Virus record (IMG/VR): IMGVR_UViG_3300027899_000001
Span: 186,001-250,000 of that record
Length of the DNA: 64,000 nucleotides
Strand: one strand, 5' to 3'
Both the position numbers and the translations under genes were made by a program. Position 1 is the first letter of the stretch. The number at the start of each line of letters is the position of its first letter. This document shows positions 27,301 to 60,500 of the stretch, in pieces. Under the pieces are notes generated by a model that worked only from the letters and a program-made list of their open reading frames with translations, searched no databases and was not told the DNA's origin.

Positions 27301-30300
27301 TTAAGTTAAATCTCCAAATAATGTCCAGTTTGTTCCAGAAATTGTATATGCACTTGCTGCACCGTACAAATCTACTATTGAAGTAAAAGAATCTCTTGAA
27401 CGAATAGTTACACCGCTGCCAGGCACTATAGTTAAAACGCCAGTACCTGTATTTACAATAGTTATTTGTGCATTTGTTACAGAAGAAGGTAATATACAAC
27501 TCTTGGCACTACTTGAACTAAATTCTATTATTCTATTATTATCACTTTGAAGTACAGTATATGATGCGCCAGTTTGTAAATTAACAGAAGCTTCTAATAC
27601 TTGAGCAGTTCCTTGAATTCCTTGAGCACCTTGAACGCCTTGAACTCCTTGTGATCCAAGTATTCCTTGAATACCTTGTGCTCCATCTGAAGGACCTTGT
27701 GTTCCTTGAGTTCCTTGAACACCTTGCAATCCTCCCTGAGGACCTTGAGGGCCTTGAATACTTTGAATACCTTGAATACCTTGTGGTCCAAGTATTCCTT
27801 GTATACCTTGAATTCCAATTATTCCTTGAATTCCTTGAGCACCATCTATTCCTTGAATTCCTTGAGCACTTTGAATTCCTTGAGCACCTTGAGCTCCAAG
27901 TATTCCTTGAGAACCAGTTACTCCTTGAATTCCTTGAGAACCTTGAACTCCTTGAGTTCCTTGAGAACCTTGAATTCCTTGTACTCCATTTATACCTTGT
28001 ATACCAGCAATACCTTGTATTCCTTGTGTACCTTGTATTCCTTGTGTACCCTGAGTACCTTGTGTGCCTTGAGTACCTTGTATTCCTTGAGTTCCTTGTA
28101 TTCCTTGACGTCCTTGAGATCCTTGAGCACCTAATGTACCTTGAATTCCTTGACTGCCTTCAATTCCTTGAGAACCTGTTATACCTTGACGTCCCTGTGT
28201 TCCTTGTGTACCTTGAACTCCTTGAGTTCCTTGAACTCCTTGAATTCCTTGAGTACCTTCTAATCCTTGTGTTCCTTGACGACCTTGAATTCCTTGAGCT
28301 CCTTGAGAACCTTGAAGTCCTTGAGAACCTTGAAGTCCTTGAGAACCTTGAATTCCTTGTGTTCCTTGTGTTCCTTGACGACCTTGAATTCCTTGAGCTC
28401 CTTGAAGTCCTTGTGTTCCTTCTAATCCTTGTATACCTTGAGTACCTTGAGTACCTTGAATTCCTTGACGTCCTTGAGCTCCTTGACTACCTTGAATTCC
28501 TTGACTACCTTGAACTCCTTGAACTCCTTGAATTCCAGTTGTTCCTTGCGTTCCTGTTATTCCCTGACGTCCTTGAATTCCTTGAGTACCTTGAGTTCCT
28601 TGTATTCCTTGTGTGCCAGTTAATCCTTGAATACCCTGAGAACCTTCTATACCTTGAATACCTTGAGAACCTTCAGTTCCTTGAATACCTTGAATTCCTT
28701 CTCCTTGAATTCCTTGAATTCCTTGAGAACCTTGAATTCCTTGAGAACCTTGAATTCCTTGTGTGCCTTGAGAACCTGTTACTCCTTGAATTCCTTGTGT
28801 TCCTTGAAGTCCTTGAGCACCATCTATACCTTGAATACCTTGAACACCAGTTATTCCTTGACGTCCTTGAGATCCTTGAGCACCTTGTATTCCTTGAGAA
28901 CCACCAATTCCTTGAATTCCTTGAGCACCTTGAGCACCACTAGTTCCTTGAGATCCTTCAGGACCTTGAGCACCATCAGCACCTTGTACTCCTTGCATTC
29001 CTTCTCCTTGAATTCCTTGTACACCTTGTGTTCCTTGTATTGCTATTCCTTGTATACCTTGAACTCCTACTCCTTGAGGACCTTGAATACCTTGTGCTCC
29101 ATCTGAAGGGCCTTGCGTTCCTTGAGCACCTTGAACACCTTGCAATCCTCCTTGAGGACCTTGTGGCCCCTGTACACTTTGAATTCCTTGAATTCCTTGA
29201 ACACCATCTATACCTTGAACTCCACTTATACCTTGAATACCTTGTAATCCTGTTATTCCTTGTATTCCTTGAGTTCCTTGAGCTCCTTCTATTCCTTGAG
29301 CACCCTCTATTCCTTGAATTCCTTGAACACCATCTAAACCTTGAATACCTTGAATACCATTAATTCCTTGAATACCTTGAGCTCCTTCTATTCCTTGAGC
29401 ACCATCTATTCCTTGTATTCCTTGTATACCATCTATTCCTTGAATTCCTTGAGTTCCTTGTGTTCCTTGAATACCGTATATACCTTGAATTCCTTGTACT
29501 CCTTGAGTTCCTTGAGTTCCTTGAGTTCCCTGTGTTCCTTGTATTCCTTGAAGACCATCAGTTCCTTGAATTCCTTGAATACCATCAATACCTTGTGTTC
29601 CTTGAGTTCCCTGTGTTCCTTGAGTACCATCTATACCTTGTATTCCTTGAGTACCAGTTATACCTTGCGAACCTTGAATTCCTTGAGTACCTTGAGTTCC
29701 TTGTGTTCCTTGACTACCTTGAATACCCTGAGTACCTGTTATTCCTTGACGTCCTTGTATTCCTTGAGCACCTTGTAATCCTTGAGCTCCATCTATTCCT
29801 TGTATTCCTTGAGCTCCATCTATTCCTTGAGTTCCTTGAGTTCCAATTGTTCCTTGAGCTCCATCTATACCTTGAATTCCTTGAGTACCCGTTATTCCTT
29901 GAGTACCTTGTGTTCCTTGTGTTCCTTGAGAACCTTGAATTCCTTGTGTTCCTTGAGTTCCTTGAGCACCTTGAATTCCTTGACGTCCTTGTATTCCTTG
30001 AGCACCTTGTAATCCTTGAGCTCCATCTATTCCTTGTATTCCTTGAGTACCTGTTATTCCTTGTGAACCTTGAATTCCTTGAGCACCTTGTGTTCCTTGA
30101 AAACCCGTTATACCTTGTATTCCTTGAGTACCTTGTGTTCCTTGTGCTCCTTGAGCACCTTGAATTCCTTGAGTACCTTGAATTCCTTGAGTTCCTTGAG
30201 AACCTTGAATTCCTTGACGTCCTTGTATTCCTTGTGTACCTTGTGATCCCTGAGCTCCATCTATACCCTGAATTCCTTGAGTACCAATTATTCCTTGTGA

Positions 30301-32556
30301 ACCTTGAGTTCCTTGAATTCCTTGAGTTCCCAGCGTACCTTGAATTCCTTGTGTTCCTTGTAAACCCGTTATTCCTTGCGAACCTTGAATTCCTTGAGTA
30401 CCATCAGTTCCCTGAATACCTTGAATACCTTGTACACTAACCCCTTGTATTCCCTGAACTCCTACTCCTTGAGGACCTTGAATACCTTGCGCTCCATCTG
30501 AAGGGCCCTGCGTTCCTTGAGCACCTTGAACACCTTGTAATCCTCCCTGAGGACCCTGAGGACCTTGTATACTTTGAATTCCCTGTATTCCTTGAACTCC
30601 ATCTATACCCTGAACTCCACTTATTCCCTGAATTCCTTGAATTCCTTGAGCACCAGTTCCGGTTATTCCTTGTATTCCTTGAGCACCTATTATTCCTTGA
30701 GAACCTATTATTCCTTGAATTCCTTGACCACCTTGAATTCCCTGACTTCCTTGAGAACCTGTTATTCCTTGACGGCCTTGAGTTCCTTGAATTCCTTGGC
30801 CTCCTTGAGAACCAGTTATTCCTTGATCACCTTGAATTCCCTGACTTCCTTGAGAACCTGTTAATCCTTGTGTTCCTTGAGTACCATCTATTCCTTGAGT
30901 TCCTTGAGAACCAGTTATTCCTTGAGCACCTTGAGTTCCTTGAATTCCTTGAGCACCTTGAGAACCAGTTATACCTTGAGTTCCTTGAGAACCAATTATT
31001 CCTTGAGCACCCTGTGTTCCTTGAATTCCTTGACTTCCTTGATCGCCTTGAATTCCTTGACTTCCTTGATCACCTTGAATTCCTTGAGTTCCTTGAGAAC
31101 CATCTATTCCTTGTGTTCCTTGAGAACCTGTTATACCTTGTGTTCCTTGAGAACCTGTTATTCCTTGAGCACCCTGTGTTCCTTGAATTCCTTGAGAACC
31201 TGTTATGCCTTGTGTTCCTTGAGAACCTGTTATACCTTGACGACCTTGAGTTCCTTGAATTCCCTGACTTCCTTGATCACCTTGAATTCCTTGACTTCCT
31301 TGATCACCTTGAATTCCTTGACTTCCTTGATCACCTTGTATTCCTTGACTTCCTTGAGAACCCGTTATGCCTTGAGTTCCTTGAGAACCTGTTATTCCTT
31401 GAGGACCTTGAGAACCTTGAATTCCTTGAGAACCTTGAATTCCCTGAGTTCCTTGAGAACCTGTTATTCCTTGACGACCCTGAGTTCCTTGAATTCCTTG
31501 AAGTCCTTGATCACCTTGAATTCCCTGACTTCCTTGAGAACCTGTTATTCCTTGAGGACCTTGAGATCCTTGAATTCCTTGAGAACCTTGAATTCCTTGA
31601 ATTCCCTGATTTCCTTGAACACCTTGAACACCTTGACGACCCTGAATTCCTTGAACTCCTTGAGTTCCTTGAACTCCTTGAACTCCAGAAGAACCAATTG
31701 ATCCTATTGTTCCTTGAATTCCTTGAACACCTTGTGTTCCTTGTATTCCTTGACGTCCCTGTACACCTTGTACACCTTGAATTCCTTGTGCACCAATTGA
31801 TCCTTGAGTACCTTGACGACCTTGAGCACCTTGTGTTCCTTGAGCACCCTGAATTCCTTGACGTCCTTGAACTCCTTGAGTTCCTTGAGGACCACTTGGA
31901 CCTTGTGCACCTGATATTCCACTGCCACCTCCACCGCCGCTTTCATTTAATCCATATTTATATGTTATCCATGAAGAACCCCATGAAGGATCATATTCAA
32001 TTGCTATAAATTCAACATATGCAAATCCTGCTTCACTTGTATCAACTACAAACGTTGATCCAGTAGAAATATCTAATAAAATTGTAAAAGGATTAGTACC
32101 AACTAAAGAACTATCAAAATAAATACCTACAACCTGAGATAAATTATCATTTTTTAATTGAATAGGAGAAGCATTAGTAATTCTGTAATATGCTTTATTA
32201 ACATCTATCTGTTTATATGATGGATTTTCATATGGCCAATTATCTCCTGCTGTACATGCATCTCTGCCAATTGTTATATCATCGATATACATTCTATAAT
32301 AATTATAATCAGCAATATTACTATTATCATATAAATTAGTATATTGATTTTTTACAACTAAATTATCAACGATTGCTGTTACAAATTCTCCAGTAGCTCC
32401 TTTTACTCGTCCCGTTGTATTAATAGGAACAACAACTACTCCAGAAGATTCATTGTAAATAAGATCCAAATAACGTTTAAATGCCTGATTATTATAATTA
32501 TAGATAGCAGGAAACTCAGGTATGAACGTAGACAGATATACATTTTTTAAATCCAT
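27301..32556 (-). CDS. Collagen-like long fibre protein, 1751 aa
   Basis: ~210-aa N-terminal domain; ~1,440 aa of Gly-X-Gln triplets; C-terminal phage fibre domain (YTVLQSDNNRII...VTIRS...WTLFGDLT). Confidence 0.85.
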   Translation of the reverse strand: MDLKNVYLSTFIPEFPAIYNYNNQAFKRYLDLIYNESSGVVVVPINTTGRVKGATGEFVTAIVDNLVVKNQYTNLYDNSNIADYNYYRMYIDDITIGRDACTAGDNWPYENPSYKQIDVNKAYYRITNASPIQLKNDNLSQVVGIYFDSSLVGTNPFTILLDISTGSTFVVDTSEAGFAYVEFIAIEYDPSWGSSWITYKYGLNESGGGGGSGISGAQGPSGPQGTQGVQGRQGIQGAQGTQGAQGRQGTQGSIGAQGIQGVQGVQGRQGIQGTQGVQGIQGTIGSIGSSGVQGVQGTQGVQGIQGRQGVQGVQGNQGIQGIQGSQGIQGSQGPQGITGSQGSQGIQGDQGLQGIQGTQGRQGITGSQGTQGIQGSQGIQGSQGPQGITGSQGTQGITGSQGSQGIQGDQGSQGIQGDQGSQGIQGDQGSQGIQGTQGRQGITGSQGTQGITGSQGIQGTQGAQGITGSQGTQGITGSQGTQGIDGSQGTQGIQGDQGSQGIQGDQGSQGIQGTQGAQGIIGSQGTQGITGSQGAQGIQGTQGAQGITGSQGTQGIDGTQGTQGLTGSQGSQGIQGDQGITGSQGGQGIQGTQGRQGITGSQGSQGIQGGQGIQGIIGSQGIIGAQGIQGITGTGAQGIQGIQGISGVQGIDGVQGIQGIQSIQGPQGPQGGLQGVQGAQGTQGPSDGAQGIQGPQGVGVQGIQGVSVQGIQGIQGTDGTQGIQGSQGITGLQGTQGIQGTLGTQGIQGTQGSQGIIGTQGIQGIDGAQGSQGTQGIQGRQGIQGSQGTQGIQGTQGIQGAQGAQGTQGTQGIQGITGFQGTQGAQGIQGSQGITGTQGIQGIDGAQGLQGAQGIQGRQGIQGAQGTQGTQGIQGSQGTQGTQGTQGITGTQGIQGIDGAQGTIGTQGTQGIDGAQGIQGIDGAQGLQGAQGIQGRQGITGTQGIQGSQGTQGTQGTQGIQGSQGITGTQGIQGIDGTQGTQGTQGTQGIDGIQGIQGTDGLQGIQGTQGTQGTQGTQGVQGIQGIYGIQGTQGTQGIQGIDGIQGIQGIDGAQGIEGAQGIQGINGIQGIQGLDGVQGIQGIEGAQGIEGAQGTQGIQGITGLQGIQGISGVQGIDGVQGIQGIQSVQGPQGPQGGLQGVQGAQGTQGPSDGAQGIQGPQGVGVQGIQGIAIQGTQGVQGIQGEGMQGVQGADGAQGPEGSQGTSGAQGAQGIQGIGGSQGIQGAQGSQGRQGITGVQGIQGIDGAQGLQGTQGIQGVTGSQGTQGIQGSQGIQGSQGIQGIQGEGIQGIQGTEGSQGIQGIEGSQGIQGLTGTQGIQGTQGTQGIQGRQGITGTQGTTGIQGVQGVQGSQGIQGSQGAQGRQGIQGTQGTQGIQGLEGTQGLQGAQGIQGRQGTQGTQGIQGSQGLQGSQGLQGSQGAQGIQGRQGTQGLEGTQGIQGVQGTQGVQGTQGTQGRQGITGSQGIEGSQGIQGTLGAQGSQGRQGIQGTQGIQGTQGTQGTQGTQGIQGTQGIQGIAGIQGINGVQGIQGSQGTQGVQGSQGIQGVTGSQGILGAQGAQGIQSAQGIQGIDGAQGIQGIIGIQGIQGILGPQGIQGIQSIQGPQGPQGGLQGVQGTQGTQGPSDGAQGIQGILGSQGVQGVQGAQGIQGTAQVLEASVNLQTGASYTVLQSDNNRIIEFSSSSAKSCILPSSVTNAQITIVNTGTGVLTIVPGSGVTIRSRDSFTSIVDLYGAASAYTISGTNWTLFGDLT
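27605..31920 (-). repeat. 9-nt period coding repeat, (Gly-X-Gln)n
   Basis: ccttg recurs every 9 nt on the plus strand. Confidence 0.95.
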
Positions 32557-33973: not shown

Positions 33974-35332
33974 ATGCAAGCACACTATATCAGCGAAAAA
34001 TTTACAGAAGAATCAACAGATCCAATTAGTGATCTTGGTATAGGTATAATAAATGTGAGGAAAGAGTTTAAAACAGAAGAAGAATTTCTTCCTTATCTTT
34101 ATAAAATTTCACCAATGATAATAAATATCAAAGATCCTATAGAAATAATATACGAAGGTGATAAAGACTGGATTTTAAAGCCAAGATTCTTTAATAAAAT
34201 AGAAAAATATTGTGCAAAATATATTACAATAAATGGTGAAAGAGGTGATTTTGGATTTAATCCAGGGAATTTTAAAAGATATATCTTAAAGAAAGCAAGA
34301 AAAAAAATACATGAAGCATTTCGAGAAGAATCTGATCCTACAGAAGATTTAGGAATTGGAAAAGTTCGTTGGTTTAACAAAGTAAAAGATTTTTATATAA
34401 ATCAAGTTTTTGGATATGAAGAAGATGCGGAGCTTTTCATGGAAATCGCTGATGATGAATTAGAAGAAATGTTTCAAAATCAAATAGAGCCCGATGATGC
34501 AGCAGACGAATGTTATAGTGATATTAATTTATATAACAAATGGCGTGAAATGTCGGGTATTGATGAATCTTTAAACGAAAAATTTACAGATGAATCCGAT
34601 CCTATACGTGATATGGGAATAGGCGGAGTTTTTCGTAAAAAAGATTTTCAAACTAAAGAAGAAATATTAGATTTTCTTCTATTATATATACCTAGTATTT
34701 TTAAAACAGAAGAAATTCCAGATGATATTGTATATCCTAAAGAAGCGCATCAAGGCGCATTTAAATATAAATATTGGTACGCTTTAACAGATTATTGTAA
34801 AAAATATATTACTTTAAGAAAAAAAGAAGTAATATTTGATAATCTTCTTTGTATAGATTTATGGATAAAGTTAATAAAAATGGGATATCCTAAAGTAGAA
34901 CAAACTGAAAAAAATCATGATTATGGGCGAGAAATAATAATAGAATCGTTAAACGAAAAGTTTAAAGAACAATCAGATCCTATACATGATATGGGTATTG
35001 GGTGGGATGAAAATACTATTGAAGGGTATCTTAAACTACACGGATATTCTAAAATAAATATTGATCGTAGAAAACGAGGACATATACCCGCTATTAACGT
35101 AGAATTTTCTAAAAATGATGTGAATTTTGAATTTGAGATTGTGTTAGACGATGATTGGGCGTCTTGGAGACATCAATTAGATTGGTGGGATGACAATGAT
35201 AAAAATTATGATTGTCAAACAGAGAGATGGACATTGGGAGATAAAAACGGAGAAATAGACGACGAGAAATTTATAGTGTCTATATTAAAACGAAGATTAA
35301 ATAAATATAATAAACAACATGCGCAAACCTAA
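33974..35332 (+). CDS. Four-module SDP-GIG-tagged polyprotein (putative internal head protein precursor), 452 aa
   Basis: Tag copies at 33974-34045, 34307-34360, 34571-34624 and 34949-35002, each preceded by (I/L)xE. Confidence 0.7.
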   Translation: MQAHYISEKFTEESTDPISDLGIGIINVRKEFKTEEEFLPYLYKISPMIINIKDPIEIIYEGDKDWILKPRFFNKIEKYCAKYITINGERGDFGFNPGNFKRYILKKARKKIHEAFREESDPTEDLGIGKVRWFNKVKDFYINQVFGYEEDAELFMEIADDELEEMFQNQIEPDDAADECYSDINLYNKWREMSGIDESLNEKFTDESDPIRDMGIGGVFRKKDFQTKEEILDFLLLYIPSIFKTEEIPDDIVYPKEAHQGAFKYKYWYALTDYCKKYITLRKKEVIFDNLLCIDLWIKLIKMGYPKVEQTEKNHDYGREIIIESLNEKFKEQSDPIHDMGIGWDENTIEGYLKLHGYSKINIDRRKRGHIPAINVEFSKNDVNFEFEIVLDDDWASWRHQLDWWDDNDKNYDCQTERWTLGDKNGEIDDEKFIVSILKRRLNKYNKQHAQT

Positions 35333-37487: not shown

Positions 37488-37503
37488 TGAACCACTTATG
37501 AAT

Positions 37504-38871
37504 ATGAAATTAATTAGAGAAAATATAATAAACGAAAAATTTAGAGAAGAATCTGATCCTATTAAAGATATGGGTATAGGAATGAAACGTATATATTATT
37601 CTTTTGCACCTCAAGAAACTCAATATATTTTATTACTTCGTTGTGAAAAAATGTCTGAAAAATTAGAAGATTTTTTCATACGTCATTCTTTTTTTTGGTA
37701 TAATAAGAATAATGCATGGGAATCATCTTGGGCATATCCAAAAGATAGATGTATAAGAGAAGCTTCAAAAATATTTAAACAAATAGAAAAACTTAAAACT
37801 TACAAAGTTGTATTAGACAGAGACGAAGAAGTCTTTTTTACAGTTCCTGGCTATAATGTAAATGAAGGTGTAGCAGATAAATATACGAGACAAGATCCAC
37901 ATTTATCTCGTGTTCCTGTAGAACATGAAGATTTTGAAAGAGGATATGAGGAAAAAGAAGCTGAAGGAAAACAAAAAGAAGATAGAGATAAAATTGTATA
38001 TAAGGTTAGTAATCATGTATACGTAATGAAAAATCCCACTTCTTTAGAAAAATTCTCTCCCGATTCACGTGCAATTGTAAATAAAAATGGAGATTTATAT
38101 GTTACTACATATAATGTTATGACTCATGATGAAATGGCTCGAAGATTGGAAAAATTAGGAGAATTAAAATATCAAGATAAATGGTGGCAAAAATCTCCAA
38201 CAGAATTTATCACTATTCAAAGAATGTATAAAGAAAATAAATTTGTATTAGGAGAATCTAATGAAGCTATTATGTATTATGTAGATGCTAGTAGAAGAGC
38301 GATATATAATATGCCTGATACTGTTGAATCTGCTAAAAAAGCATTTATACCTTTTCTTGAAAAAGCGAAAAAAGTAAATCCTCAATATCAATTTATTGAT
38401 AAATCTTTAGATGATTTACTTTATTATGCTCCACATCCTGTTAAAGAAAGTTTAATTAATGAGCCTAAATCAATTACACAAGCAGAAAAACAGTTAGCAA
38501 AAGATAGAGAAATGCCCGGACTTAATAAAAGAATATTAAAAACTATTAAAGATAGAGGTGGTGATATCGTCAAAATTTATGCTGTTAATGCAGATTATGT
38601 AAGAGATAAAAAACCAGGATTAAATTTCGATGGATTCACAGATGGAGGACATCATTATGTAACAAGCTTACCCGGATATAAAAAATGGATACCGGAAAAT
38701 GAAATTTGGATAGATGATGTATTTATGATGAAACCGAATGATTTACGAGCAATACTACAACATGAATTTACAGAAAGAAATCTAATGAAGTATAAACATT
38801 GGTCTTATGATAAGGCTCACGATTATGCAAATAAAAAAGAATCAGAATACAGAGAAAGAGTTAAAAAATAA
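37504..38871 (+). CDS. SDP-GIG-tagged multi-domain protein with C-terminal HExxE...H putative metal site
   Basis: MKLIRENIINEKFREESDPIKDMGIG (start likely the second Met at 37504); internal VNE and ESLINE junction-like sites; QHEFTERNLM...YDKAHDYA. Confidence 0.65.
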   Translation: MKLIRENIINEKFREESDPIKDMGIGMKRIYYSFAPQETQYILLLRCEKMSEKLEDFFIRHSFFWYNKNNAWESSWAYPKDRCIREASKIFKQIEKLKTYKVVLDRDEEVFFTVPGYNVNEGVADKYTRQDPHLSRVPVEHEDFERGYEEKEAEGKQKEDRDKIVYKVSNHVYVMKNPTSLEKFSPDSRAIVNKNGDLYVTTYNVMTHDEMARRLEKLGELKYQDKWWQKSPTEFITIQRMYKENKFVLGESNEAIMYYVDASRRAIYNMPDTVESAKKAFIPFLEKAKKVNPQYQFIDKSLDDLLYYAPHPVKESLINEPKSITQAEKQLAKDREMPGLNKRILKTIKDRGGDIVKIYAVNADYVRDKKPGLNFDGFTDGGHHYVTSLPGYKKWIPENEIWIDDVFMMKPNDLRAILQHEFTERNLMKYKHWSYDKAHDYANKKESEYRERVKK

Positions 38872-38927: not shown

Positions 38928-39290
38928 ATGATAAAGGATATTTATATACGCTCTGTAGACGATCCCAATTTTCAATACGGTGTTTTAGAACATTCAGATG
39001 CAATAGAATCAATTATCGCAAAAATAAAAATGTTATTTGGAACTCGTCCTGGACAAGTAATGGGTGATATCGCATTTGGATTAGGTATAGAAGATTTAAT
39101 TTTTGAAACACGCGTAAATAAAATTCAATTAGAAGAAAAAATAAAATCCCAATTTGATATTTATATATCAGAAACAAAAGATTTTAAAATAACGCCTACA
39201 GTTTCATTTGGACGTGCTGATGGATATGATTATGCTATTATAGATGTTTTTGTAGATGATCAAAGATTGATAGGAATATTAGTTAAATAA
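38928..39290 (+). CDS. Baseplate wedge subunit, gp25-like, 120 aa
   Basis: IKMLFGTRPGQVMGDIAFGLGIEDLIFE matches the gp25 T..GE....P.FG..L..LLFE pattern; size and context fit. Confidence 0.75.
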   Translation: MIKDIYIRSVDDPNFQYGVLEHSDAIESIIAKIKMLFGTRPGQVMGDIAFGLGIEDLIFETRVNKIQLEEKIKSQFDIYISETKDFKITPTVSFGRADGYDYAIIDVFVDDQRLIGILVK

Positions 39291-39565
39291 TGAAAGCAAA
39301 AAGAGTATTTGAAAAATTTGAAGAAGGAACTGATCCTATTGATGATATGAACATAGGAAAGGTAGTATGTCCTTATTGTAAAGGCCATGGATATACAGAT
39401 GAACACGATCCTCTTTGTTATGATCCAAGAACAGGAGAACATGATTGTTATGGATGTCCTATACAAGTTCCATATGATTATTGCAATGGAACTGGAGAAA
39501 TATTAAAAAAGGATATTGCTAGACATCAAGCAGAAGAACAAAATTGGGACGATTTGCCCTTTTAA
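39290..39565 (+). CDS. Tagged small Zn-finger protein with SSB-like C-terminal tail, 91 aa
   Basis: MKAKRVFEKFEEGTDPIDDMNIG; CPYCKGHG, CYGCP, YCNGTG; ends WDDLPF. Confidence 0.65.
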   Translation: MKAKRVFEKFEEGTDPIDDMNIGKVVCPYCKGHGYTDEHDPLCYDPRTGEHDCYGCPIQVPYDYCNGTGEILKKDIARHQAEEQNWDDLPF

Positions 39566-39581
39566 AAATAAAATATAAAAA

Positions 39582-40286
39582 ATGGAATATTTTGTATATA
39601 TAACAACCAATTTAATTAACGGAAAACAATATGTTGGAGAACATTCAACTGATAACTTAAAAAAAGATAAGTATTTAGGAAGCGGTAATTTTACAAACGC
39701 AAAAAAGAAATATGGAATACATAATTTTGAAAGAAAAATTCTTGAGTTTTTTCCAACAAAACAAGAAGCATTTGCTGCTCAAGCAAAATATATAATTGAA
39801 TTTAATACATTAGTTCCTAATGGATATAATATAAGCCCAACTGGTGGATGGGGAGCTAGTGGGTGTATTTCAAAGGAAGGAAGATTAAGAATAAGTAAAG
39901 CTAATAAAGGTCATAAAAGATGGTTAGGAAAAACTCATACTGAAGAATCAAAAAAGAGAATGAGTAAATCACACGAAGGAATATTACACACAAAAGAAGC
40001 TAAACAAAAAATAAGTAATTCTACCTCAGGAGAAAAAAATGGAATGTATGGAAAACATCATAATGAAGAAACAAAACAAAAAATAAGAAAAAAGGCTGAA
40101 GGACAAATATGGCCAGAGGAAAGAAAAAAAAGAGTAAGTGAAAAAAATAAAGGAAGAAAATATATAGGTGAATTATATGAAATGAGATATAAAAAAATAG
40201 AATGTCTATACTGTAAAACATTAGTAGATAAAGCTAATTATTCAAGATGGCATGGAGAAAATTGTAAAAAGAAAATAAAAATATAA
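39582..40286 (+). mobile_element. Freestanding GIY-YIG homing endonuclease with NUMOD3-type repeats
   Basis: YFVYITTNLINGKQYVG, YLGSG, GYNI; repeated H(T/N)EE(S/T)K.K(I/M)S motifs. Confidence 0.85.
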
Positions 40287-40287
40287 T

Positions 40288-42186
40288 ATGGAATTATTTC
40301 AGACTACTCGCGTGAGAATGTCAGAGCTTTATCAAGATGCTCTTACATTTATCACAAATACCTATGGAGACCTTGGACAATATTTCACAATGGCTTCTCC
40401 TATGGGACAATTACTTCAAGTAATTCTTCATTATGGAAGAATGATTTTATTTTATGTTGAAGATTCTGTAACTGAATTAAACATTAAAACTGCATCAAGA
40501 CCACAAAGTATAAAAGGTCTTGCAAGTTTAACTGGTCATAATCCTTCAAGAGCTATGGCAGCAAGAGGAACATTAACATTATCATATAATGGTTCTAAAC
40601 TTCCTACATATGCAAATGTAATTTCTATTCTTAATTATACTCAACTTACAAATAGTCAAAATGGCTTAACATATACTATTATTCTTCCGGGACAAGAAAC
40701 ACGATTAGATTTAACAAATATTACAAATTATATTGAAGTTAATATCGTTCAAGGAAAAATAGAATTTCAACAAGCAACTGGAACAGGAGATGCATTACAA
40801 TCATTTAATTTTCAAAATAAAAAGGGTGCATTTATTGATAATTATTACGTAAATGTTTATGTTGATGGAGTTAAATGGGCTATTGTAGATTCTATTTTAG
40901 ACATGACTATACAACAACCTGCAGTTATGGTTAAAACAGGACAAACAGGAGGAATAGACATTTTCTTTGGAAATGGTTATAACGGTGCTGCTCCAAGAAT
41001 GGGTTCAACTATATTAGTTGAACATCTTATTACTGATGGAGAAACTGGAAATATAAACAGTATGACTACTCCTACTACAAATATATGGAAATTTATAACT
41101 AAAGGATATGCACTTAATGGAGAAGAAATTGATATTAATAAATATGTTTCAATTGCAATAAAAAATGATATAATGTTTGGTGCTCAAGAAGAACCGCTTT
41201 ATCTAACAAGATTATTAGCTCCAAATATGTCAAGGAGTTTTGTTCTTGCAAACACAAACAATTATATTTATTTTCTTAGAAGATTAAATATGTTTACTGT
41301 TATAGATGCTATTCCTGGGTTTGCAACATTTGAAGATCAATATACGCTGGACAAATATAATCAAGCTCAAACAACATATGAAAAAATAAGTACAGAATAT
41401 AGAAATTTAACTGCAACATACGGAGTAACTTCAACACAAGCAACTGCTAAAAAAGTTGAATTAGATAATGCTCAACAACAATTATATACTTATCAAGCAG
41501 CACTTGAAAAACAAAAACAAGATGATAATACAGTTTACTTATTTTTAGTTCCTGATATAAATAAAAGAATACAACCCGGAGAAAATTATTATAATTGTAA
41601 TATGGCTGCATTTTCATTATCAGATGGAGAAAAATTAGCAATATTAGATTTAATAGAACAAAGTGGTCAAAGAATTTTAACAGTTGATAATGTAATATTA
41701 GATTTACAATTTCCAAGATTCACTTTAAATATGTCTCTTATATTATGGGAAGGAGCTTCTTTTGATACCGTAAGACAAAATATTATTTCAGCAACTTCTG
41801 ATTATTTTTTACAAAATACAAGAAGAGACAGAATTCCTGTTTCTGATTTAGTAAGAATTATTGAAGGATTAGATGGAGTGGATTCTGTAAATGTATGGTT
41901 TGATGCAGCAAAAGAAAATTTTGATAAAGTATATAAAAATCATTATGGAATTGATGATTATGGTGATATTATTCTTGAAAGATATGTTAAAGATGCATTT
42001 GGAAATGAAGTGTCTATAAAAGATGTATATCCTATTATTAGAGGAGGGTTTGAAAATGTATCTGGCGTATTTTACGAAGATAGTTTAACAAAAAATAAAT
42101 TATCATCATTAAATATTCAAGTTAGAGGCTATACAGCCAAAAACTTAAATTCAGAACATAATATAGCAATTGTTAATAATCTATGA
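40288..42186 (+). CDS. Baseplate wedge subunit, gp6-like, 632 aa
   Basis: ELNIKTASRPQSIKGLASLTGHNPSR, IFFGNG..G..P and Y/HLITDGETGN are gp6/baseplate-J-like motifs; follows the gp25-like gene. Confidence 0.75.
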   Translation: MELFQTTRVRMSELYQDALTFITNTYGDLGQYFTMASPMGQLLQVILHYGRMILFYVEDSVTELNIKTASRPQSIKGLASLTGHNPSRAMAARGTLTLSYNGSKLPTYANVISILNYTQLTNSQNGLTYTIILPGQETRLDLTNITNYIEVNIVQGKIEFQQATGTGDALQSFNFQNKKGAFIDNYYVNVYVDGVKWAIVDSILDMTIQQPAVMVKTGQTGGIDIFFGNGYNGAAPRMGSTILVEHLITDGETGNINSMTTPTTNIWKFITKGYALNGEEIDINKYVSIAIKNDIMFGAQEEPLYLTRLLAPNMSRSFVLANTNNYIYFLRRLNMFTVIDAIPGFATFEDQYTLDKYNQAQTTYEKISTEYRNLTATYGVTSTQATAKKVELDNAQQQLYTYQAALEKQKQDDNTVYLFLVPDINKRIQPGENYYNCNMAAFSLSDGEKLAILDLIEQSGQRILTVDNVILDLQFPRFTLNMSLILWEGASFDTVRQNIISATSDYFLQNTRRDRIPVSDLVRIIEGLDGVDSVNVWFDAAKENFDKVYKNHYGIDDYGDIILERYVKDAFGNEVSIKDVYPIIRGGFENVSGVFYEDSLTKNKLSSLNIQVRGYTAKNLNSEHNIAIVNNL

Positions 42187-49436: not shown

Positions 49437-50060
49437 TTAAATATATTTATGAAGAGTTGCAGATCTGTTATCAATTATCTTTGAGCCCTGAATTAAAATT
49501 TTATTATCATTAATATATTCACGAATATATTTATCTGACATACCAGTGTCAAAGCATATAAAATCCCCCCATATTTCTTGAGGCATATATTCTAAAGACG
49601 TCAATTCTTTATTATGAGATATATTAAAATTATCTTTTATTATTCTTGGACAATTTTTTAAAGATAATAGCTTATTTTCAAAAAGCATTATAGATAATCC
49701 TATTTCTTTTGGTATACCTTCTAATGACGTAAGTTGATTTTTTCCAATATACAAATTAAAATCTACTTTTTTTGGAAATCCTTTAAAATTTTTTAATCCG
49801 CTTTCATACATTGATATTGTGCCGTGAATCTCATTAAATTTAATAAATTCAGGAAATTCTCCATTTGGTAAAGGTATGGCATGAAAATTTATACCTCTTG
49901 CATTAATAGTAAAATCATCATTTATAGTAGGCTCATATACATTTTTCTCATATTTTTCTAGCCATTCTTTAATTAACTTGCGAGATCCTATACCCATATC
50001 TCTTATAGGATCAGAATCTTCTCTAAATTTCTCATTTATGTGTTCTCTTACTATTTTCAT
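49437..50060 (-). CDS. Tagged LRR-like protein, 207 aa
   Basis: MKIVREHINEKFREDSDPIRDMGIG; repeats LKNFKGFPKKV, LTSLEGIPKEI, LLSLKNCPRII, LTSLEYMPQEI. Confidence 0.75.
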   Translation of the reverse strand: MKIVREHINEKFREDSDPIRDMGIGSRKLIKEWLEKYEKNVYEPTINDDFTINARGINFHAIPLPNGEFPEFIKFNEIHGTISMYESGLKNFKGFPKKVDFNLYIGKNQLTSLEGIPKEIGLSIMLFENKLLSLKNCPRIIKDNFNISHNKELTSLEYMPQEIWGDFICFDTGMSDKYIREYINDNKILIQGSKIIDNRSATLHKYI

Positions 50061-50377
50061 TGTATTAAATATCTTTCATTCATATCTACACGATAAACAA
50101 CATAACTATTATCATAAAAATTTACCCTTTCACCGCCATTATAACTTTCAAAACTATCTATAATACAAGAACGTTTTTTACCTCCAATAAATACACCTGT
50201 TATTTTTTTACCTTTTAAAGAATTTAAAAAATCCAACCACGAAGATAACCAAAAATTATTACCGCTTACATAATATTTAGAACGTTCTTCTTCAAAATTA
50301 ATACCTCCTATTCCCAGATCATGTATAGGATCTGATTCTTCTTTGAATAATTCATTTATATGTTCTCTTACTATCAC
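50057..50377 (-). CDS. Tagged hypothetical protein, ~106 aa
   Basis: Likely GTG start at 50377 overlapping the upstream TAG: (M)IVREHINELFKEESDPIHDLGIG. Confidence 0.7.
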   Translation of the reverse strand: MIVREHINELFKEESDPIHDLGIGGINFEEERSKYYVSGNNFWLSSWLDFLNSLKGKKITGVFIGGKKRSCIIDSFESYNGGERVNFYDNSYVVYRVDMNERYLIQ

Positions 50378-51183
50378 TAATTCCAATTTATTTTTATAGT
50401 ATATTTAAATCTACGATATCCATTTGGATAACTTTTTATAAATTCTTTAGAATGTTCTATACTTTTTATTGAATTAAAAACATTTAAATATTCAGTTTTT
50501 GGTGCGAACGCCCAACGAGATGAAAAGAGGCCAGAAGATATTTTATAACGTTGTTCTGATAAATACTCCATCATTCCAGATTCTTTTAACCAATAATCTA
50601 CATTATTTTTAAACGCAACATTATATGGAGGATATTCCACAGCAATTTGAAGATTACTTCCATCTATCTCATATTTATATAAATTTATAAAATGGTGGTC
50701 TGTCATTAAATCTGTAAACTTCTGCAGTGAATCTTCAATAGCTTTTCGTATTCCTATTCCTAAATCATATACTGGGTCAGATTCTTCTGAGAATTTTTCA
50801 TTTAGATTGCGATTCCATGTCTTATACCCCATTTTTTCTAATTTATTGAAAAGTTTTGTTATTACAAATGATGTAGTTTGGTCAAATCCTTTCATAGAAG
50901 GTATTTTAATATATTTACTAACATATTTACATAAATCTTCATATTTATCGTTATCTAAATGGTCTTGTGCTGTAAATTCTTTAAAAGACTTTGTATATAT
51001 TTTTAGAATATTATCTGGAATTTTATTAGTTTTATAAATAATAGGAATTACTTTTAATAAAAAATCTGCAGCGCCTTCTAACGTATCAAACGATCTTTCT
51101 ACATAAATACCAATTCCTAAATCACGAATAGGATCTGATTCTTCTATAAATTTCTCATTTATATGTTCTCTTACTATTTTCAT
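50377..51183 (-). CDS. Two-module tagged polyprotein, 268 aa
   Basis: N-terminal tag plus internal LNEKFSEESDPVYDLGIG at 50752-50805. Confidence 0.75.
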   Translation of the reverse strand: MKIVREHINEKFIEESDPIRDLGIGIYVERSFDTLEGAADFLLKVIPIIYKTNKIPDNILKIYTKSFKEFTAQDHLDNDKYEDLCKYVSKYIKIPSMKGFDQTTSFVITKLFNKLEKMGYKTWNRNLNEKFSEESDPVYDLGIGIRKAIEDSLQKFTDLMTDHHFINLYKYEIDGSNLQIAVEYPPYNVAFKNNVDYWLKESGMMEYLSEQRYKISSGLFSSRWAFAPKTEYLNVFNSIKSIEHSKEFIKSYPNGYRRFKYTIKINWN

Positions 51184-51524
51184 CTTTCAAATCCCATCTT
51201 TTTAAATCTCTCCATTAATAGCTCTGGCCAATAATATACTCTACATGCCTGCTCTCCTGTAGAAATTCCTTCAAACGAAATATATTCTGTTAAAAATTTT
51301 TGTATAATTAAAAAATATGTATGATTTATAGCTCCACCATATCTTAAAATATCATCAGGAATTTTTGATGTTTTTAAAAGTTGCGGAATAATAGTTATTA
51401 AATAATCTAAAAATTTGTCTACATTTACAAAATCTCGATGCGCATATAATCCAATATTCATATCTCTTATGGGATCCGATTCTTCTTTGAATGCTTCATA
51501 TATATGTTCTCTAACTAATTTCAT
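51180..51524 (-). CDS. Tagged protein (cargo family A), 114 aa
   Basis: MKLVREHIYEAFKEESDPIRDMNIG; IP....T.KIPD.I...Y...KMG motif shared with paralogs. Confidence 0.75.
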   Translation of the reverse strand: MKLVREHIYEAFKEESDPIRDMNIGLYAHRDFVNVDKFLDYLITIIPQLLKTSKIPDDILRYGGAINHTYFLIIQKFLTEYISFEGISTGEQACRVYYWPELLMERFKKMGFER

Positions 51525-51990
51525 GCCGAATGTTCTCCCATTATGATAGTAAAATATTCAATTACACTGGGTTTTATTTTAAAAATTACTTCTGAACAAT
51601 TAAATTCAGTAGGAGGTGCACTAGACGAATTTGATTTAATATCTACCTCGTCTTCCATAAAATACAAAATGCCAGCATGTTTTAAAAGATTTTTAGAATA
51701 CTCAATTTTATTTAAAGGTTTTCCATCAAGAGTTTTAAATAAATTAGAATATGTAAGAACTCTTAATTGTTCGTTGGCTAAATCTATAATTAAACCTCTT
51801 ATATTTTTTTATCACTTATATGCCAATTATTATTCATAGTAGATAGATATTCAAATTTGAAAGTGGTATCATATTTTATTATATCTTCAGGAGATTTTTC
51901 TATATTTTTTACAATGCCAATGCCTAAATCATGAACAGGATCTGATTCTTCTCTGAATTTCTCGTTAATATGTTCTCGTACTATTTTCAT
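51521..51990 (-). pseudogene. Tagged gene (cargo family B) interrupted by a frameshift at an A7 tract
   Basis: The 63-aa ORF stops just after A7 (T7 at 51804-51810). Adding one A gives a 156-aa ORF ending in an ATGA overlap at 51521 and resembling 42183..42662. Confidence 0.7.
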
Positions 51991-58749: not shown

Positions 58750-59451
58750 TTAATGTATTAGTTTATATTTTTGTAATAATTTTATTATTCGTATTCTTCT
58801 ATTTTTTACTTTCCAATAAAGAAGATTACGAGATAAATTAGAATTCACTGTTGCTCCAAGTTTTATAATAAATTCAGCAGTTTTAATTTTTCCATTATAA
58901 CAAGCTGTTGCTAAAGAATTACTTAATACTTCAGGAGTTAATTGTATTCCATTGTCTATTAATAATTGAAGTATATGAACATGATCAGTTTTAGCTGTCA
59001 TATAAAATGCTCTTGAATTTTCTAAGTTTACGTCTGCTCCATGATCTATCATAAATTTAACCATTAAGGAATTACCTTTAGTACAAGCTTGCACAAGAAA
59101 TTTTCCATTAGACATATTTAAATCAACGCCTTCTTCAACTAATATTTTAAGTATTTCTAAATTATTATATACAATTGTGTATCTTAAATAATCACTATCT
59201 TGATAATTACTACGTGTAATAGATTTTTTTGCTTGTCTATATAAATAAGAAACAAATTCAGGTTTATTAGATGATATGCATGCTAATAATTTAGAATGAG
59301 CAGAAGAACTTGCATTTGGATAACTACGGCCGCTTTTTTCAAACCAAGTATTAATAGCGTGTTCCATTCCAATTCCCATATCTTGTATAGGATCGGATTC
59401 TTCTGAAAATTTTTCATTTATCCATTTTCTATATGCTGAAAATTTTGTCAT
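58750..59451 (-). CDS. Tagged ankyrin-repeat protein, 233 aa
   Basis: MTKFSAYRKWINEKFSEESDPIQDMGIG; ANK motifs (LKILVEEGVDLN, VKFMIDHGADVN, AEFIIKLGATVN). Confidence 0.8.
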   Translation of the reverse strand: MTKFSAYRKWINEKFSEESDPIQDMGIGMEHAINTWFEKSGRSYPNASSSAHSKLLACISSNKPEFVSYLYRQAKKSITRSNYQDSDYLRYTIVYNNLEILKILVEEGVDLNMSNGKFLVQACTKGNSLMVKFMIDHGADVNLENSRAFYMTAKTDHVHILQLLIDNGIQLTPEVLSNSLATACYNGKIKTAEFIIKLGATVNSNLSRNLLYWKVKNRRIRIIKLLQKYKLIH

Positions 59452-59453
59452 CG

Positions 59454-60500
59454 TTAAAATAATTCATATTTTTTTAATAAGTCATAAACTCTTATTCTTC
59501 TACGTTGTTGAGACCATTTTTTCAATAACATTTTTAAAAGACTATTTACTTTTGCGCCTTTTTCTACTAAAAATTCTATCATTTTCAAATCTCCTCTGTC
59601 ACAAGCACTAGTTAATGCAGCATCTAAAATTTCTTTATCTATATCTATATTATCTAACAGATATTGTATAACATTTTTATGTCCAGCATTAACTGCTACT
59701 AAAAATAAATCTCTATTATATCCAATGCCAGTATTTGCGCCATTGTTAATTAAATATTCTAACATAGGTATATTGTCATATACCGTTGTATTTCTAAGTA
59801 TACAAGGATTTGCATTTACATTTGCTCCTGCTTCAACTAACATTTTAACTATTTCAAAGTTATTATAATTTACTGCTGTTTCTAAATAATCACCATAATT
59901 ATAATTTAAATTAGGAACTTTTGGTATAAGATATTTAACGAATTCTATTTTATTATCTACAATACTTTGTCTTAATCTTGAGCGAATATCATTAAAATAT
60001 AAAGGATATAATTTATCTCTAAAATAATCATCCATTATTCTTTCAATTCCAATACCCATATCATGAACTGGATCTGATTCTTCTTTAAATTTTTCATTTA
60101 CTGACGTATTTGGCGAAATGTTTGTATGATATTTACTATTTAATAATTTAATAACTTGTTCAACCATATCTATTACTTTAATATTTTCCCATTCATGACT
60201 ATATGCGTTTTCAGTATGTTCGAATGCATTTTTAAATGCTATATTATCATTTGCGTTAATTGTCAGTTCTTTTAAAGTAAAATAAAGAAGCATAACACAT
60301 ATAGTTTTTTCAGCATCTGTTTTCTTTTTATCTCGAAAATTTTTATTATAGAACGTTGTTGTACTTATAGGCCCCATTCTTTTTATTTCCTCTTTCCATA
60401 AATTTTGTAAATAAGGACGGCCTATACCCAAATCTTTTATTGGATCAGATTGATCAGAAAACTTTTCATTTAACCATTTTCTATATGCGTAGAATTTCAT
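59454..60500 (-). CDS. Two-module tagged polyprotein, second module ankyrin repeats, 348 aa
   Basis: N-terminal tag; internal VNEKFKEESDPVHDMGIG at 60048-60101; VKMLVEAGANVN, IEFLVEKGAKVN. Confidence 0.8.
   Translation of the reverse strand: MKFYAYRKWLNEKFSDQSDPIKDLGIGRPYLQNLWKEEIKRMGPISTTTFYNKNFRDKKKTDAEKTICVMLLYFTLKELTINANDNIAFKNAFEHTENAYSHEWENIKVIDMVEQVIKLLNSKYHTNISPNTSVNEKFKEESDPVHDMGIGIERIMDDYFRDKLYPLYFNDIRSRLRQSIVDNKIEFVKYLIPKVPNLNYNYGDYLETAVNYNNFEIVKMLVEAGANVNANPCILRNTTVYDNIPMLEYLINNGANTGIGYNRDLFLVAVNAGHKNVIQYLLDNIDIDKEILDAALTSACDRGDLKMIEFLVEKGAKVNSLLKMLLKKWSQQRRRIRVYDLLKKYELF

What the first reader, a model, noticed from the sequence alone, without database searches (positions are those of the whole stretch)
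39290..39565. Tagged mini-protein ending in an SSB-tail mimic (WDDLPF)
Seen: tag, DnaJ-like CxxCxGxG Zn-finger elements (the last has Tyr where Cys is expected) and an acidic C-terminus EEQNWDDLPF. Established: bacterial SSBs recruit repair and replication enzymes via a C-terminal DD(I/L)PF. No OB fold is evident. Inference: an injected decoy or adaptor that occupies SSB-tail pockets of host nucleases/helicases or of defence sensors.
Basis: partly seen in the sequence, partly recalled or inferred. Interest (0 to 1): 0.65.

Follow-up and report, generated by a model that had tools for sequence, protein, structure and literature searches.

The report
Phage zinc mini-protein with SSB tail
A 91-residue protein of a 405-kb freshwater phage joins a small acidic zinc-binding module to the exact C-terminal peptide (DDLPF) that bacterial SSB uses to recruit repair and replication enzymes, and a third of its phage-only relatives keep that peptide, so it probably plugs into those host enzymes, although no binding has been shown.

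Summary
The ORF at 39290-39565 (+) encodes 91 aa with three parts.

1. **N-terminal tag.** It is 21 residues long and occurs 14 times in the window and 88 times in the complete 405-kb genome.
2. **Zinc module.** It is DnaJ-like and acidic. Its last CxxC reads YxxC, the only such case among 90 relatives.
3. **C-terminus.** A helix is followed by ...WDDLPF.

An exhaustive HMMER search found about 90 representative relatives, all from uncultured phages. Of these, 29 end in [ED]-D-D-L-P-F-type tips, always 24-33 residues after the last Cys. A real Bacteroidota SSB ends in the same DDLPF. The phage's own SSB is of the gp32 type, and no other ORF in the genome carries this tip.

Every core is acidic, so this is not a DNA binder. 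I read it as a competitor or adaptor for SSB-tail pockets.

The "injected" part is weaker. The tag resembles a T4 capsid-targeting and protease-processing signal ([ILV]-x-E at residue 8-13), the genome encodes a gp21-type protease, and the tag is fused to ankyrin and other small bodies. That evidence is circumstantial.

No binding was shown: the co-folding job gave no answer. This looks like an undescribed family and a testable lead.

The parts
39290..39565 (+). ORF of the 91-aa tagged zinc mini-protein (stop included)
   Evidence: Orthologs at 47-53% identity keep the same gene position.
39296..39358 (+). N-terminal tag, residues 3-23 (AKRVFEKFEEGTDPIDDMNIG). It is the most divergent copy of the genome's 21-residue tag.
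   Evidence: alignment A1; 88 copies in the genome; selected at the protein level
39305..39313 (+). V6-F7-E8, at the position of the tag's [ILV]-x-E. Putative cleavage site of the gp21-type prohead protease (inferred).
   Evidence: The Glu sits at residue 8-13 in nearly all tagged ORFs. The genome has a Peptidase_S77. T4 CTS rules are from PMC9026906.
39368..39391 (+). CPYCKGHG, residues 27-34, an exact CxxCxGxG knuckle (C27, C30 and G34 invariant in the family)
39404..39418 (+). H39 (invariant) to C43. C43 is an extra Cys at the place where 59 of 90 relatives have a second His, so it is the probable fourth ligand of the second zinc site.
39446..39463 (+). CYGCPI, residues 53-58. CxxCP knuckle (C56 and P57 invariant, C53 at least 90% conserved).
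39473..39496 (+). YDYCNGTG, residues 62-69. Degenerate last knuckle, with Tyr62 in place of the Cys found in at least 90% of relatives; C65 is invariant.
39506..39550 (+). Predicted helix, residues 73-87, forming a spacer of constant length between zinc module and tip
   Evidence: AF2 model. In all 29 tail-bearing relatives the tip lies 20-41 residues after the last Cys, mostly 24-33.
39548..39562 (+). DDLPF-COOH, residues 87-91, an SSB-Ct-type tip
   Evidence: PMC5872125, PMC5531588
38928..39290 (+). Upstream gene, a gp25-like baseplate wedge protein (120 aa). Its stop overlaps the start of the mini-protein gene.
   Evidence: PF04965 at E 6e-4, below the cut-off. A 120-aa gene holds the same position in the relatives L002 and L021.
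39582..40286 (+). GIY-YIG/NUMOD3 homing endonuclease inserted between the mini-protein gene and the baseplate wedge gene
   Evidence: It is absent at this place in relative L021, which has a 115-aa ORF there.
40288..42186 (+). Baseplate wedge subunit (632 aa, gp6/J-like)
   Evidence: phrog_219 at E 5.7e-22; the only stretch with DNA similarity to Lak phages
37498..38871 (+). Neighbouring tagged ORF (457 aa, one tag) in the same operon
33974..35332 (+). Tagged ORF with three tags (452 aa) in the same operon
49437..51990 (-). Cluster of five small tagged ORFs on the opposite strand (six tag copies)
58750..60500 (-). Two further tagged ORFs (233 aa, ankyrin repeats; 348 aa, two tags)

Best explanation
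The gene encodes a member of an uncharacterised family of small, strongly acidic, two-zinc proteins known only from phages. The fold is DnaJ-cysteine-rich-like and the ligand pattern is C2-H-(H/C)-C2-C2.

About one third of the family, including this protein, continue after the zinc module with a short helix and then [ED]-D-D-L-P-F-COOH. That is the same C-terminal tip by which bacterial SSB docks onto its partner enzymes (exonucleases, RecQ/PriA-type helicases, RecO, primase and others).

Most likely mechanism (inferred): the tip inserts into the SSB-tail pockets of host genome-maintenance or SSB-sensing proteins. The conserved acidic zinc module supplies a second, tail-independent contact. 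The protein would then work either as a competitor that uncouples those enzymes from SSB-coated DNA, or as an adaptor that couples them to whatever the core binds.

In this 405-kb phage lineage the protein has also been given the lineage's 21-residue N-terminal tag and sits in the late baseplate operon. The tag most likely acts as a virion (prohead) targeting and gp21-type protease processing signal, so the protein would be made late, carried in the particle and delivered at the next infection (also inferred).

Shown: the ORF, the tag family, the zinc-module family, the conservation and constant spacing of the tail, its identity to real SSB tips, its uniqueness in the genome, and the conserved synteny. 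Inferred: binding to SSB partners, competitor versus adaptor, packaging and injection.
For: Tail. 29 of 90 representatives end in an [LI]PF-type tip and 25 are strict. The profile is F28/29, P27, L25, D22, D15, E/D18 from -1 to -6. The spacing is constant at 24-33 residues, predicted as a helix. Tail-bearers fall in at least 8 places on the core tree, yet the label is clustered, with 0 of 500 shuffles as low. Real SSBs end ...EEDDLPF (Tenacibaculum)...NQLPF (Prevotella) and ...EEIPF (Sporomusa). A C-terminal LPF is rare and SSB-specific: 3 proteins in the S. mutans genome, 2 of them SSBs (PMC5143411). SSB-Ct is the docking peptide for many enzymes (PMC5872125; PMC5531588).

This genome. It is the only ORF of about 487 with such a tip. 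The phage SSB is of the gp32 type with a different tail, and there is no PF00436 match. One ordinary phage carries both a zinc protein ending GLPF and an OB-type SSB-like protein ending DDMPF.

Core. It is acidic in all 90 members, with a mean net charge of -5.5, so it is not a DNA binder. Residues beyond the ligands are invariant. The nearest folds are the protein-binding DnaJ CR, BSD2 and Anti-TRAP modules.

Context. Untagged relatives lie in early or replication regions, next to NinG, a DEAD/ResIII helicase or an HTH gene.

Tag. 88 copies. The Glu of [ILV]-x-E sits at residue 8-13. The genome has a Peptidase_S77 at 61 bits, with a tagged ORF next to the protease and major head protein genes. 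The tag is fused to ankyrin and unknown bodies and to no recognisable enzyme. T4 CTS rules come from PMC9026906.
Against: - No binding evidence of any kind. The one co-folding job (E. coli ExoI with residues 24-91) gave no answer.
- The host is unknown. The conserved host-like gene I tried matched every phylum equally.
- Two thirds of the family lack the tail, so the core's own function, which is unknown, may be the main one.
- The spacer is a short helix, not a long disordered linker as in SSB.
- Conserved synteny and translational coupling with the gp25-like gene would also fit a structural or assembly role in the baseplate.
- The tag's Glu motif in this protein is V-F-E, not I/L-x-E. Many tagged genes lie beside replication genes such as gp32, so they need not be late or packaged.
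- Tyr62 removes one zinc ligand, and this copy may be partly degenerate.
Confidence: 0.45

Rival explanations
1. Baseplate component or assembly factor. The zinc module is a small structural or chaperone-like part of the baseplate, made together with the gp25-like wedge protein, and in this lineage the tail has no role towards host SSB partners.
For: The gene order gp25-like, zinc protein, 632-aa wedge subunit is kept in three relatives at 47-53% identity, with abutting or overlapping starts and stops. The 632-aa ORF is a baseplate wedge subunit. DnaJ CR and BSD2 modules act in protein assembly.
Against: Untagged relatives sit among early or replication genes of 34-44-kb phage contigs, not in tail modules. 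The tagged orthologs P0002, P0003 and P0004 all keep the DLPF tip, which a purely structural role does not explain. Other tagged genes of unrelated body type are interspersed in the same operon.
Confidence: 0.15
2. The tail addresses a phage-encoded partner, not host enzymes. It would work like the acidic, Phe-ending tail of T7 gp2.5 or the clamp-binding tails of T4 gp33/gp55 (both from my own knowledge, not tested here), and the zinc module could touch RNA polymerase as the Q antiterminator zinc ribbon does.
For: There are weak PHROG matches of 17 and 11 family members to 'anti-termination protein Q-like' families and weak Q-lambda fold matches. Tail-bearing relatives lie near phage helicase and nin-region genes. 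The phage has a T4-like replication and head toolkit.
Against: The tip matches the bacterial SSB consensus residue for residue over six positions. It recurs in phages of very different size and GC content (29-47%), which are unlikely to share one phage-encoded receptor. No common neighbour gene was seen.
Confidence: 0.15
3. The C-terminal LPF is a degradation signal. Host ClpXP would recognise it, either giving the protein a short life or saturating the protease.
For: In S. mutans UA159 the last three residues LPF of SsbA suffice for ClpXP degradation of GFP (PMC5143411).
Against: The same paper shows that this recognition is strain-dependent and absent in E. coli and other streptococci. The family conserves the acidic residues at -4 to -6 as well, and these belong to the SSB-Ct motif, not to the three-residue degron.
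Confidence: 0.07
4. Chance resemblance: the ending has no specific function in this protein.
For: The motif is short. Two thirds of the family lack it. This copy has lost a zinc ligand.
Against: 25 of 90 relatives have a strict [LI]PF ending, against 1 of about 487 ORFs in the genome. The spacing is constant and the label is clustered on the tree.
Confidence: 0.05

Closest known systems
Bacterial SSB C-terminal tip (SSB-Ct, DDDIPF / DDDLPF)
   Same: The last six positions of the family profile ([ED]-D-D-L-P-F-COOH) equal the SSB-Ct consensus. The window protein's DDLPF is identical to the tip of a Tenacibaculum SSB (PMC5531588).
   Different: There is no OB fold and no PF00436 match. The body is acidic, so it is not an ssDNA binder. 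The spacer is a helix of about 15 residues, not a long disordered linker.
DnaJ cysteine-rich domain, BSD2 and Anti-TRAP (DnaJ-type zinc modules)
   Same: It has CxxCxGxG knuckles. Six of the only seven PDB chains with Z of 2 or more are of this class. 69 of 82 members give sub-threshold PF00684 hits. Anti-TRAP is likewise a protein of about 53 residues that acts by binding another protein.
   Different: Only one exact CxxCxGxG is present. The second knuckle is replaced by EH...(H/C). Scores are far below the Pfam cut-offs (14.9 against 32.7 bits; 16.2 against 32). There is no J domain. Z is at most 3.5.
T4 internal proteins with a capsid targeting sequence (IPI-III), cleaved by the gp21 prohead protease
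   Same: There is a short conserved N-terminal address shared by proteins with unrelated bodies. The Glu preceded by I/L/V two residues earlier sits at residue 8-13, as with positions 8 and 10 of the T4 CTS (PMC9026906). The genome has a gp21-family protease.
   Different: The conserved motif runs 13 residues past the putative cut (KFxEESDPIxDMGIG). It occurs 88 times in at least 52 genes and also inside long ORFs every 110-135 residues. Neither packaging nor cleavage has been shown.
Phage proteins that take over host DNA metabolism through mimicry, such as lambda Gam, T7 gp5.9 and Ocr (from my own knowledge, not tested here)
   Same: It is small, acidic, phage-encoded and, in ordinary phages, placed among early genes. 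It would act by occupying a binding site meant for a host ligand.
   Different: Those proteins mimic DNA. Here the mimicked element would be a short linear peptide of a host protein, carried on a zinc scaffold. I found no such case in the literature searches.

Membership tests
Bacterial SSB (PF00436) | OB-fold ssDNA-binding domain | tested here: not met
   No Pfam hit. The AF2 model is zinc knuckles plus one helix. The genome-wide PF00436 search was empty while the controls matched.
Bacterial SSB (PF00436) | Acidic C-terminal tip D-D-[DE]-[IL]-P-F-COOH | tested here: met
   The protein ends WDDLPF. The family profile is, and real SSB tips read from genomes are.
Bacterial SSB (PF00436) | Long disordered Gly/Pro-rich linker before the tip | tested here: not met
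   There are 26 residues after the last Cys, predicted helical at 73-87.
DnaJ cysteine-rich domain (PF00684) | Four CxxCxGxG repeats forming two zinc sites | tested here: not met
   One repeat is exact, one is YxxCxGxG, one is CxxC without GxG, and the second repeat is replaced by EH...C.
DnaJ cysteine-rich domain (PF00684) | Score above the Pfam gathering threshold | tested here: not met
   14.9 bits against a cut-off of 32.7. The best family member reaches E 4.9e-5.
DnaJ cysteine-rich domain (PF00684) | V-shaped two-hairpin zinc fold | tested here: inconclusive
   The top fold matches are DnaJA2, BSD2, Anti-TRAP and DnaJ CR, but with Foldseek E of 0.58 or more and VIA Z of 2.3-3.5.
Anti-TRAP (PF15777) | Score above the Pfam gathering threshold | tested here: not met
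   16.2 bits against a cut-off of 32. 34 of 82 members give sub-threshold hits.
Phage zinc mini-protein family (unnamed; alignments A2 and A3) | Invariant C27, C30, G34, H39, C56, P57 and C65, plus the GxT.EH and CP[IV]Q motifs | tested here: met
   phmmer E values to relatives run from 2.8e-22 down to 1e-3.
Phage zinc mini-protein family (unnamed; alignments A2 and A3) | Cys at the first position of the last CxxC (at least 90% conserved) | tested here: not met
   Tyr62, unique among 90 relatives. It rests on a single assembly.
T4-type CTS-bearing, protease-processed head proteins | Short N-terminal address ending in [IL]-x-E about 10 residues from Met | tested here: inconclusive
   The tag family has [ILV]-x-E with the Glu at residue 8-13. 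This protein has V-F-E8. The resemblance is by pattern only.
T4-type CTS-bearing, protease-processed head proteins | gp21-family prohead protease in the same genome | tested here: met
   PF03420 at 61 bits, above the cut-off. phrog_207 at 6e-40, next to the major head protein.
T4-type CTS-bearing, protease-processed head proteins | Presence in the virion and cleavage at the motif | not testable with these tools
   The phage is uncultured and there are no proteomic data. Only one DNA run holds the locus.

The most novel reading that the evidence does not exclude
A clade of freshwater huge phages uses one 21-residue N-terminal address, cut by its gp21-type protease, to load more than 50 different small effector-like proteins (ankyrin repeats, zinc modules, unknown folds, some as multi-tag polyproteins) into the virion. 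One of these cargoes is an acidic zinc mini-protein that carries the host SSB's own docking peptide. It would be delivered with the DNA and would disarm or redirect SSB-dependent nucleases, helicases or defence sensors in the first moments of infection. More generally, SSB-tip mimicry on non-OB scaffolds would be a widespread, unrecognised phage strategy.
Probability: 0.2. Interest if true: 0.85.

Novelty: new variant of a known kind. Interest (0 to 1): 0.62.

Why it matters
The SSB C-terminal tip is the hub peptide of bacterial genome maintenance, and more than a dozen enzymes dock on it. A phage-only protein family that displays this peptide on a non-DNA-binding zinc scaffold would be a new way for viruses to interfere with, or borrow, host replication restart, recombination and nuclease pathways, and possibly SSB-linked defence sensing. 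It would also provide a natural, compact probe or inhibitor of the SSB interactome.

Separately, the 88-copy N-terminal tag makes a testable prediction about how a 405-kb phage addresses dozens of accessory proteins. If it is a packaging and processing signal, it defines the phage's injected proteome directly from sequence.

Tried and rejected
- **Co-folding.** The job paired E. coli exonuclease I (EX1_ECOLI) with residues 24-91. The verdict was 'no answer': score 0.00, controls not run, the partner's own fold uncertain. This is no evidence either way.
- **Word-indexed homolog search.** It found only the protein itself.
- **tblastn against 50,697 GenBank phage records.** The window protein, P0086 and P0120 gave nothing meaningful.
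- **Pattern scan of about 185,000 bacterial and archaeal genomes for the core.** No confirmed relative. The broad alignment A2 was too diverse to scan with. As a result, the planned comparison of each homolog's tail with the SSB tail of its own host genome could not be made.
- **Host inference from a GDP-mannose-dehydratase-like phage gene.** It was uninformative, at 52-57% identity to all phyla. Bacteroidota-style signal peptides in some phage ORFs are only a hint.
- **Lak-B1.** This megaphage, the nearest DNA relative by one baseplate gene, has neither the tag nor the zinc family, so this is not a Lak feature.
- **Tag as a DNA element (promoter or repeat).** Rejected on the codon evidence.
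- **Zinc module as a DNA-binding finger or non-OB SSB.** Rejected, because all 90 cores are acidic.
- **Alternative genetic code.** Not used. TAG, TGA and TAA all serve as stops (41, 89 and 357 of 487 ORFs), and this gene ends in TAA.
- **Sequencing runs.** Only one DNA run was found, probably the source sample, and no RNA run. Read laying was therefore not run, since contigs from the same reads would add nothing.
- **Source names.** The names given to relatives ('DnaJ-class molecular chaperone', 'RecJ-like exonuclease', 'hypothetical protein') are automatic and were not used as evidence.

Full report
**What is in the sequence.** The ORF at window 39290-39565 (+) is real. It has 91 codons, and its ATG overlaps the TAA stop of the upstream 120-aa gene (TAATG). 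It ends in TAA under the standard code. The protein has three parts. Residues 3-23 are the 'tag'. Residues 27-69 are rich in Cys and His: CPYCKGHG, then EH..LC, then CYGCP, then YDYCNGTG. Residues 73-87 are predicted to form a helix, and the protein ends in DDLPF (AF2 with an 82-sequence alignment: mean pLDDT 83, core blocks 86-93).

**The genome.** The window lies on a 133-kb contig that is a 100% identical sub-stretch of a 405,016-bp IMG/VR record with direct terminal repeats, rated complete. GC content is 29%. The only DNA similarity to known phages is about 70% identity over one baseplate gene of the Prevotella Lak megaphages. The single sequencing run that holds the locus is a freshwater metagenome and is probably the source sample. 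TAA, TGA and TAG all serve as stops, so I used no other genetic code. The phage has a T4-like toolkit: a gp21-family prohead protease (PF03420 at 61 bits; phrog_207 at 6e-40) next to its major head protein, and a gp32-type SSB (PF08804 at 55.9 bits) whose tail ends differently. It has no bacterial-type SSB.

**The tag.**
- The motif RExINEKFxEESDPIxDMGIG occurs 14 times in the window, 21 times in the contig and 88 times in the complete genome. It is found in at least 52 ORFs.
- It is selected as a peptide, not as DNA. Invariant residues use many synonymous codons, and third codon positions vary most.
- In almost every tagged ORF the conserved Glu, which has I, L or V two residues before it, is residue 8-13.
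- Some ORFs carry three to five copies spaced 110-135 residues apart.
- The bodies behind the tag differ: ankyrin repeats in 3 of 10 tested, this zinc module, and many with no known domain. None is a recognisable enzyme.
- One tagged ORF lies immediately upstream of the protease and major head protein genes.
- Lak-B1 lacks the tag.

The layout matches the T4 capsid targeting sequence. That sequence is the first 10 residues of IPIII, its processing determinants are at positions 8 and 10, it is removed by gp21, and it can carry foreign proteins into the head (PMC9026906). I therefore read the tag as a probable virion-targeting and processing signal. This is inference. The conserved part extends 13 residues beyond the putative cut, many tagged genes lie beside replication genes, and there are no proteomic data.

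**The zinc module is a family of its own.** The exhaustive HMMER search gave 146 hits in two classes. Long multi-tag proteins match only residues 1-25. About 90 small proteins match the Cys-rich body.
- In the 82-sequence alignment, C27, C30, G34, H39, C56, P57 and C65 are invariant, and G32, C53, Q59, C62 and G69 are at least 90% conserved.
- The ligand pattern is C2-H-(H or C)-C2-C2, which means two zinc sites in which the second DnaJ knuckle is replaced by EH...H.
- The window protein is the only one of 90 with Tyr at the C62 position. It is one of four with an extra Cys (C43) where most relatives have the second His. One site is therefore complete (H39, C43, C53, C56) and the other has only three Cys.
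- Matches to curated families are all below threshold: DnaJ_CXXCXGXG in 69 of 82 members, Anti-TRAP in 34 and Lar in 17. The PHROG matches are weak Q-like families and families of unknown function.
- By structure, only 7 of 48,161 PDB representatives reach Z of 2, and six of them are DnaJ-type zinc modules, but Z is at most 3.5 (Foldseek E of 0.58 or more).
- The nearest ESM Atlas clusters are viral 'hypothetical proteins'.
- No member was found in about 185,000 bacterial and archaeal genomes by pattern scan, or in 50,697 GenBank phage records. The family is known only from uncultured phages.
- All cores are acidic, with a mean net charge of -5.5. The window protein as a whole is -9. It is not a DNA-binding finger, and a protein-binding role or a nucleic-acid-like surface is more likely.

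**The tail.**
- Of the 90 representatives, 29 end in an [LIVA][PL][FYW] tip and 25 in strict [LI]PF.
- Their last six positions read E/D, D, D, L, P, F (18, 15, 22, 25, 27 and 28 of 29).
- The tip always lies 20-41 residues after the last Cys, mostly 24-33. This fits the predicted helix plus a short acidic stretch.
- On a weakly resolved tree built from the core columns alone, tail-bearers fall in at least eight places. The label is nevertheless clustered: 13 changes against a shuffled mean of 24.5, with 0 of 500 shuffles as low. The tail is therefore inherited and retained across cores only 30-50% identical.
- The tagged orthologs P0002, P0003 and P0004 all keep DLPF.
- For comparison I read real SSB C-termini from genomes: Tenacibaculum ...EEDDLPF, Prevotella ...NQLPF, Sporomusa ...EEIPF.
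- The literature states that DDDIPF/DDDLPF is the conserved docking peptide of SSB (PMC5872125, PMC5531588). It also reports that only three proteins of the whole S. mutans genome end in LPF, and two of them are SSBs (PMC5143411).
- In the 405-kb phage, this is the only ORF with such an ending.
- In one ordinary phage (IMG/VR 3300023181_000044) a zinc protein ending GLPF coexists with a 121-aa OB-type SSB-like protein ending DDMPF.

**Context.** In three tagged relatives the order gp25-like gene, zinc protein, about 630-aa baseplate wedge gene is kept, with abutting or overlapping reading frames (L002, L021, L022). In the window, a GIY-YIG/NUMOD3 homing endonuclease has been inserted after the zinc gene. 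Untagged relatives instead sit among small early genes of 34-44-kb phage contigs, near NinG, a DEAD/ResIII helicase or an HTH gene. The family therefore looks like an early-acting accessory protein that this huge-phage lineage has tagged and moved into a late structural operon. That is what one would expect if the protein is pre-made and carried in the particle.

**Mechanism.** Best-supported reading, confidence about 0.45: the tip docks into SSB-tail pockets of host genome-maintenance or SSB-sensing proteins. The conserved acidic core contributes a second contact, giving either a competitor or an adaptor. In this lineage the protein is probably delivered with the virion. Two thirds of the family lack the tail, so the core must have a function of its own, and that favours 'adaptor or bipartite inhibitor' over a bare peptide decoy.

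The rivals are a baseplate structural or assembly role (0.15), a phage-encoded receptor for the tail in the manner of T7 gp2.5 or T4 gp33 (0.15), a ClpXP degron (0.07) and chance (0.05).

**Limits.** No binding is shown. The only co-folding job returned 'no answer' and counts as nothing. The host is unknown. Tyr62 rests on one assembly. The fold assignment is weak. The tree has few columns. Literature searches found no earlier description of an SSB tip on a non-OB phage protein or of this tag, but the library is not complete.

Noticed in passing
window, 14 sites (e.g. 33980-34045, 34562-34624, 34940-35002, 37519-37581 on +; 49986-51978 and 59368-60482 on -); 88 sites in G001: A 21-residue peptide tag (RExINEKFxEESDPIxDMGIG) sits at the N-terminus of at least 52 ORFs and repeats inside some long ORFs every 110-135 residues. 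It is fused to ankyrin, zinc and unknown bodies and is absent from Lak-B1. It may be a capsid-targeting and protease-processing signal, and it deserves a study of its own.
   Followed up: partly
window 12289-27297 (-): A single 5002-codon ORF rich in N, L, T and S, with leucine-rich-repeat-like units. The region holds diverged copies (about 74% identity) of a unit of roughly 4 kb. It is probably a giant fibre or adhesin.
   Followed up: no
window 27301-32556 (-): A 1751-codon ORF made largely of collagen-like G-x-Q triplets (G 29%, Q 23%), with 41% GC in a 29% GC genome. This composition explains the unusually long antisense ORFs on the + strand, such as 27651-28943 and 30870-32009.
   Followed up: partly
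window 39582-40286 (+): A GIY-YIG/NUMOD3 homing endonuclease is inserted inside the baseplate operon, between the zinc gene and the wedge gene. Relative L021 has an unrelated 115-aa ORF at that place.
   Followed up: partly
G001 306658-309003 (-) (L043:6661-9003): The gp21-type head maturation protease domain (first 333 residues or so) is fused to a C-terminal extension of about 450 residues, possibly a scaffold. It lies directly upstream of the 590-aa major head protein.
   Followed up: no
G001 164587-167937 (L049 1075-2073, -): The phage SSB is of the T4 gp32 type, with a long Asn/Asp/Gly-rich tail ending ...DALNSI. A cluster of tagged ORFs lies immediately upstream, at 167659-171474.
   Followed up: no
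L027 1384-1749 (-) (IMG/VR 3300023181_000044): A 121-aa OB-like protein with only a weak SSB match (13 bits) carries a classical acidic tip ending DDMPF. It lies next to a 390-aa coiled-coil ORF, in the same phage that carries a zinc mini-protein ending GLPF.
   Followed up: partly
G001 313265-320585 (-): Several phage ORFs start with Bacteroidota-style signal peptides (hydrophobic stretch ending ...FAQ or ...FGQ). This hints at a Bacteroidota host but was not tested further.
   Followed up: no
hits P0005, P0053, P0068: Three very long proteins (2319-4304 aa) match residues 35-70 of the query in up to 18 stretches. They are probably repeated zinc-knuckle or low-complexity arrays unrelated to the phage family, and I did not examine them.
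   Followed up: no
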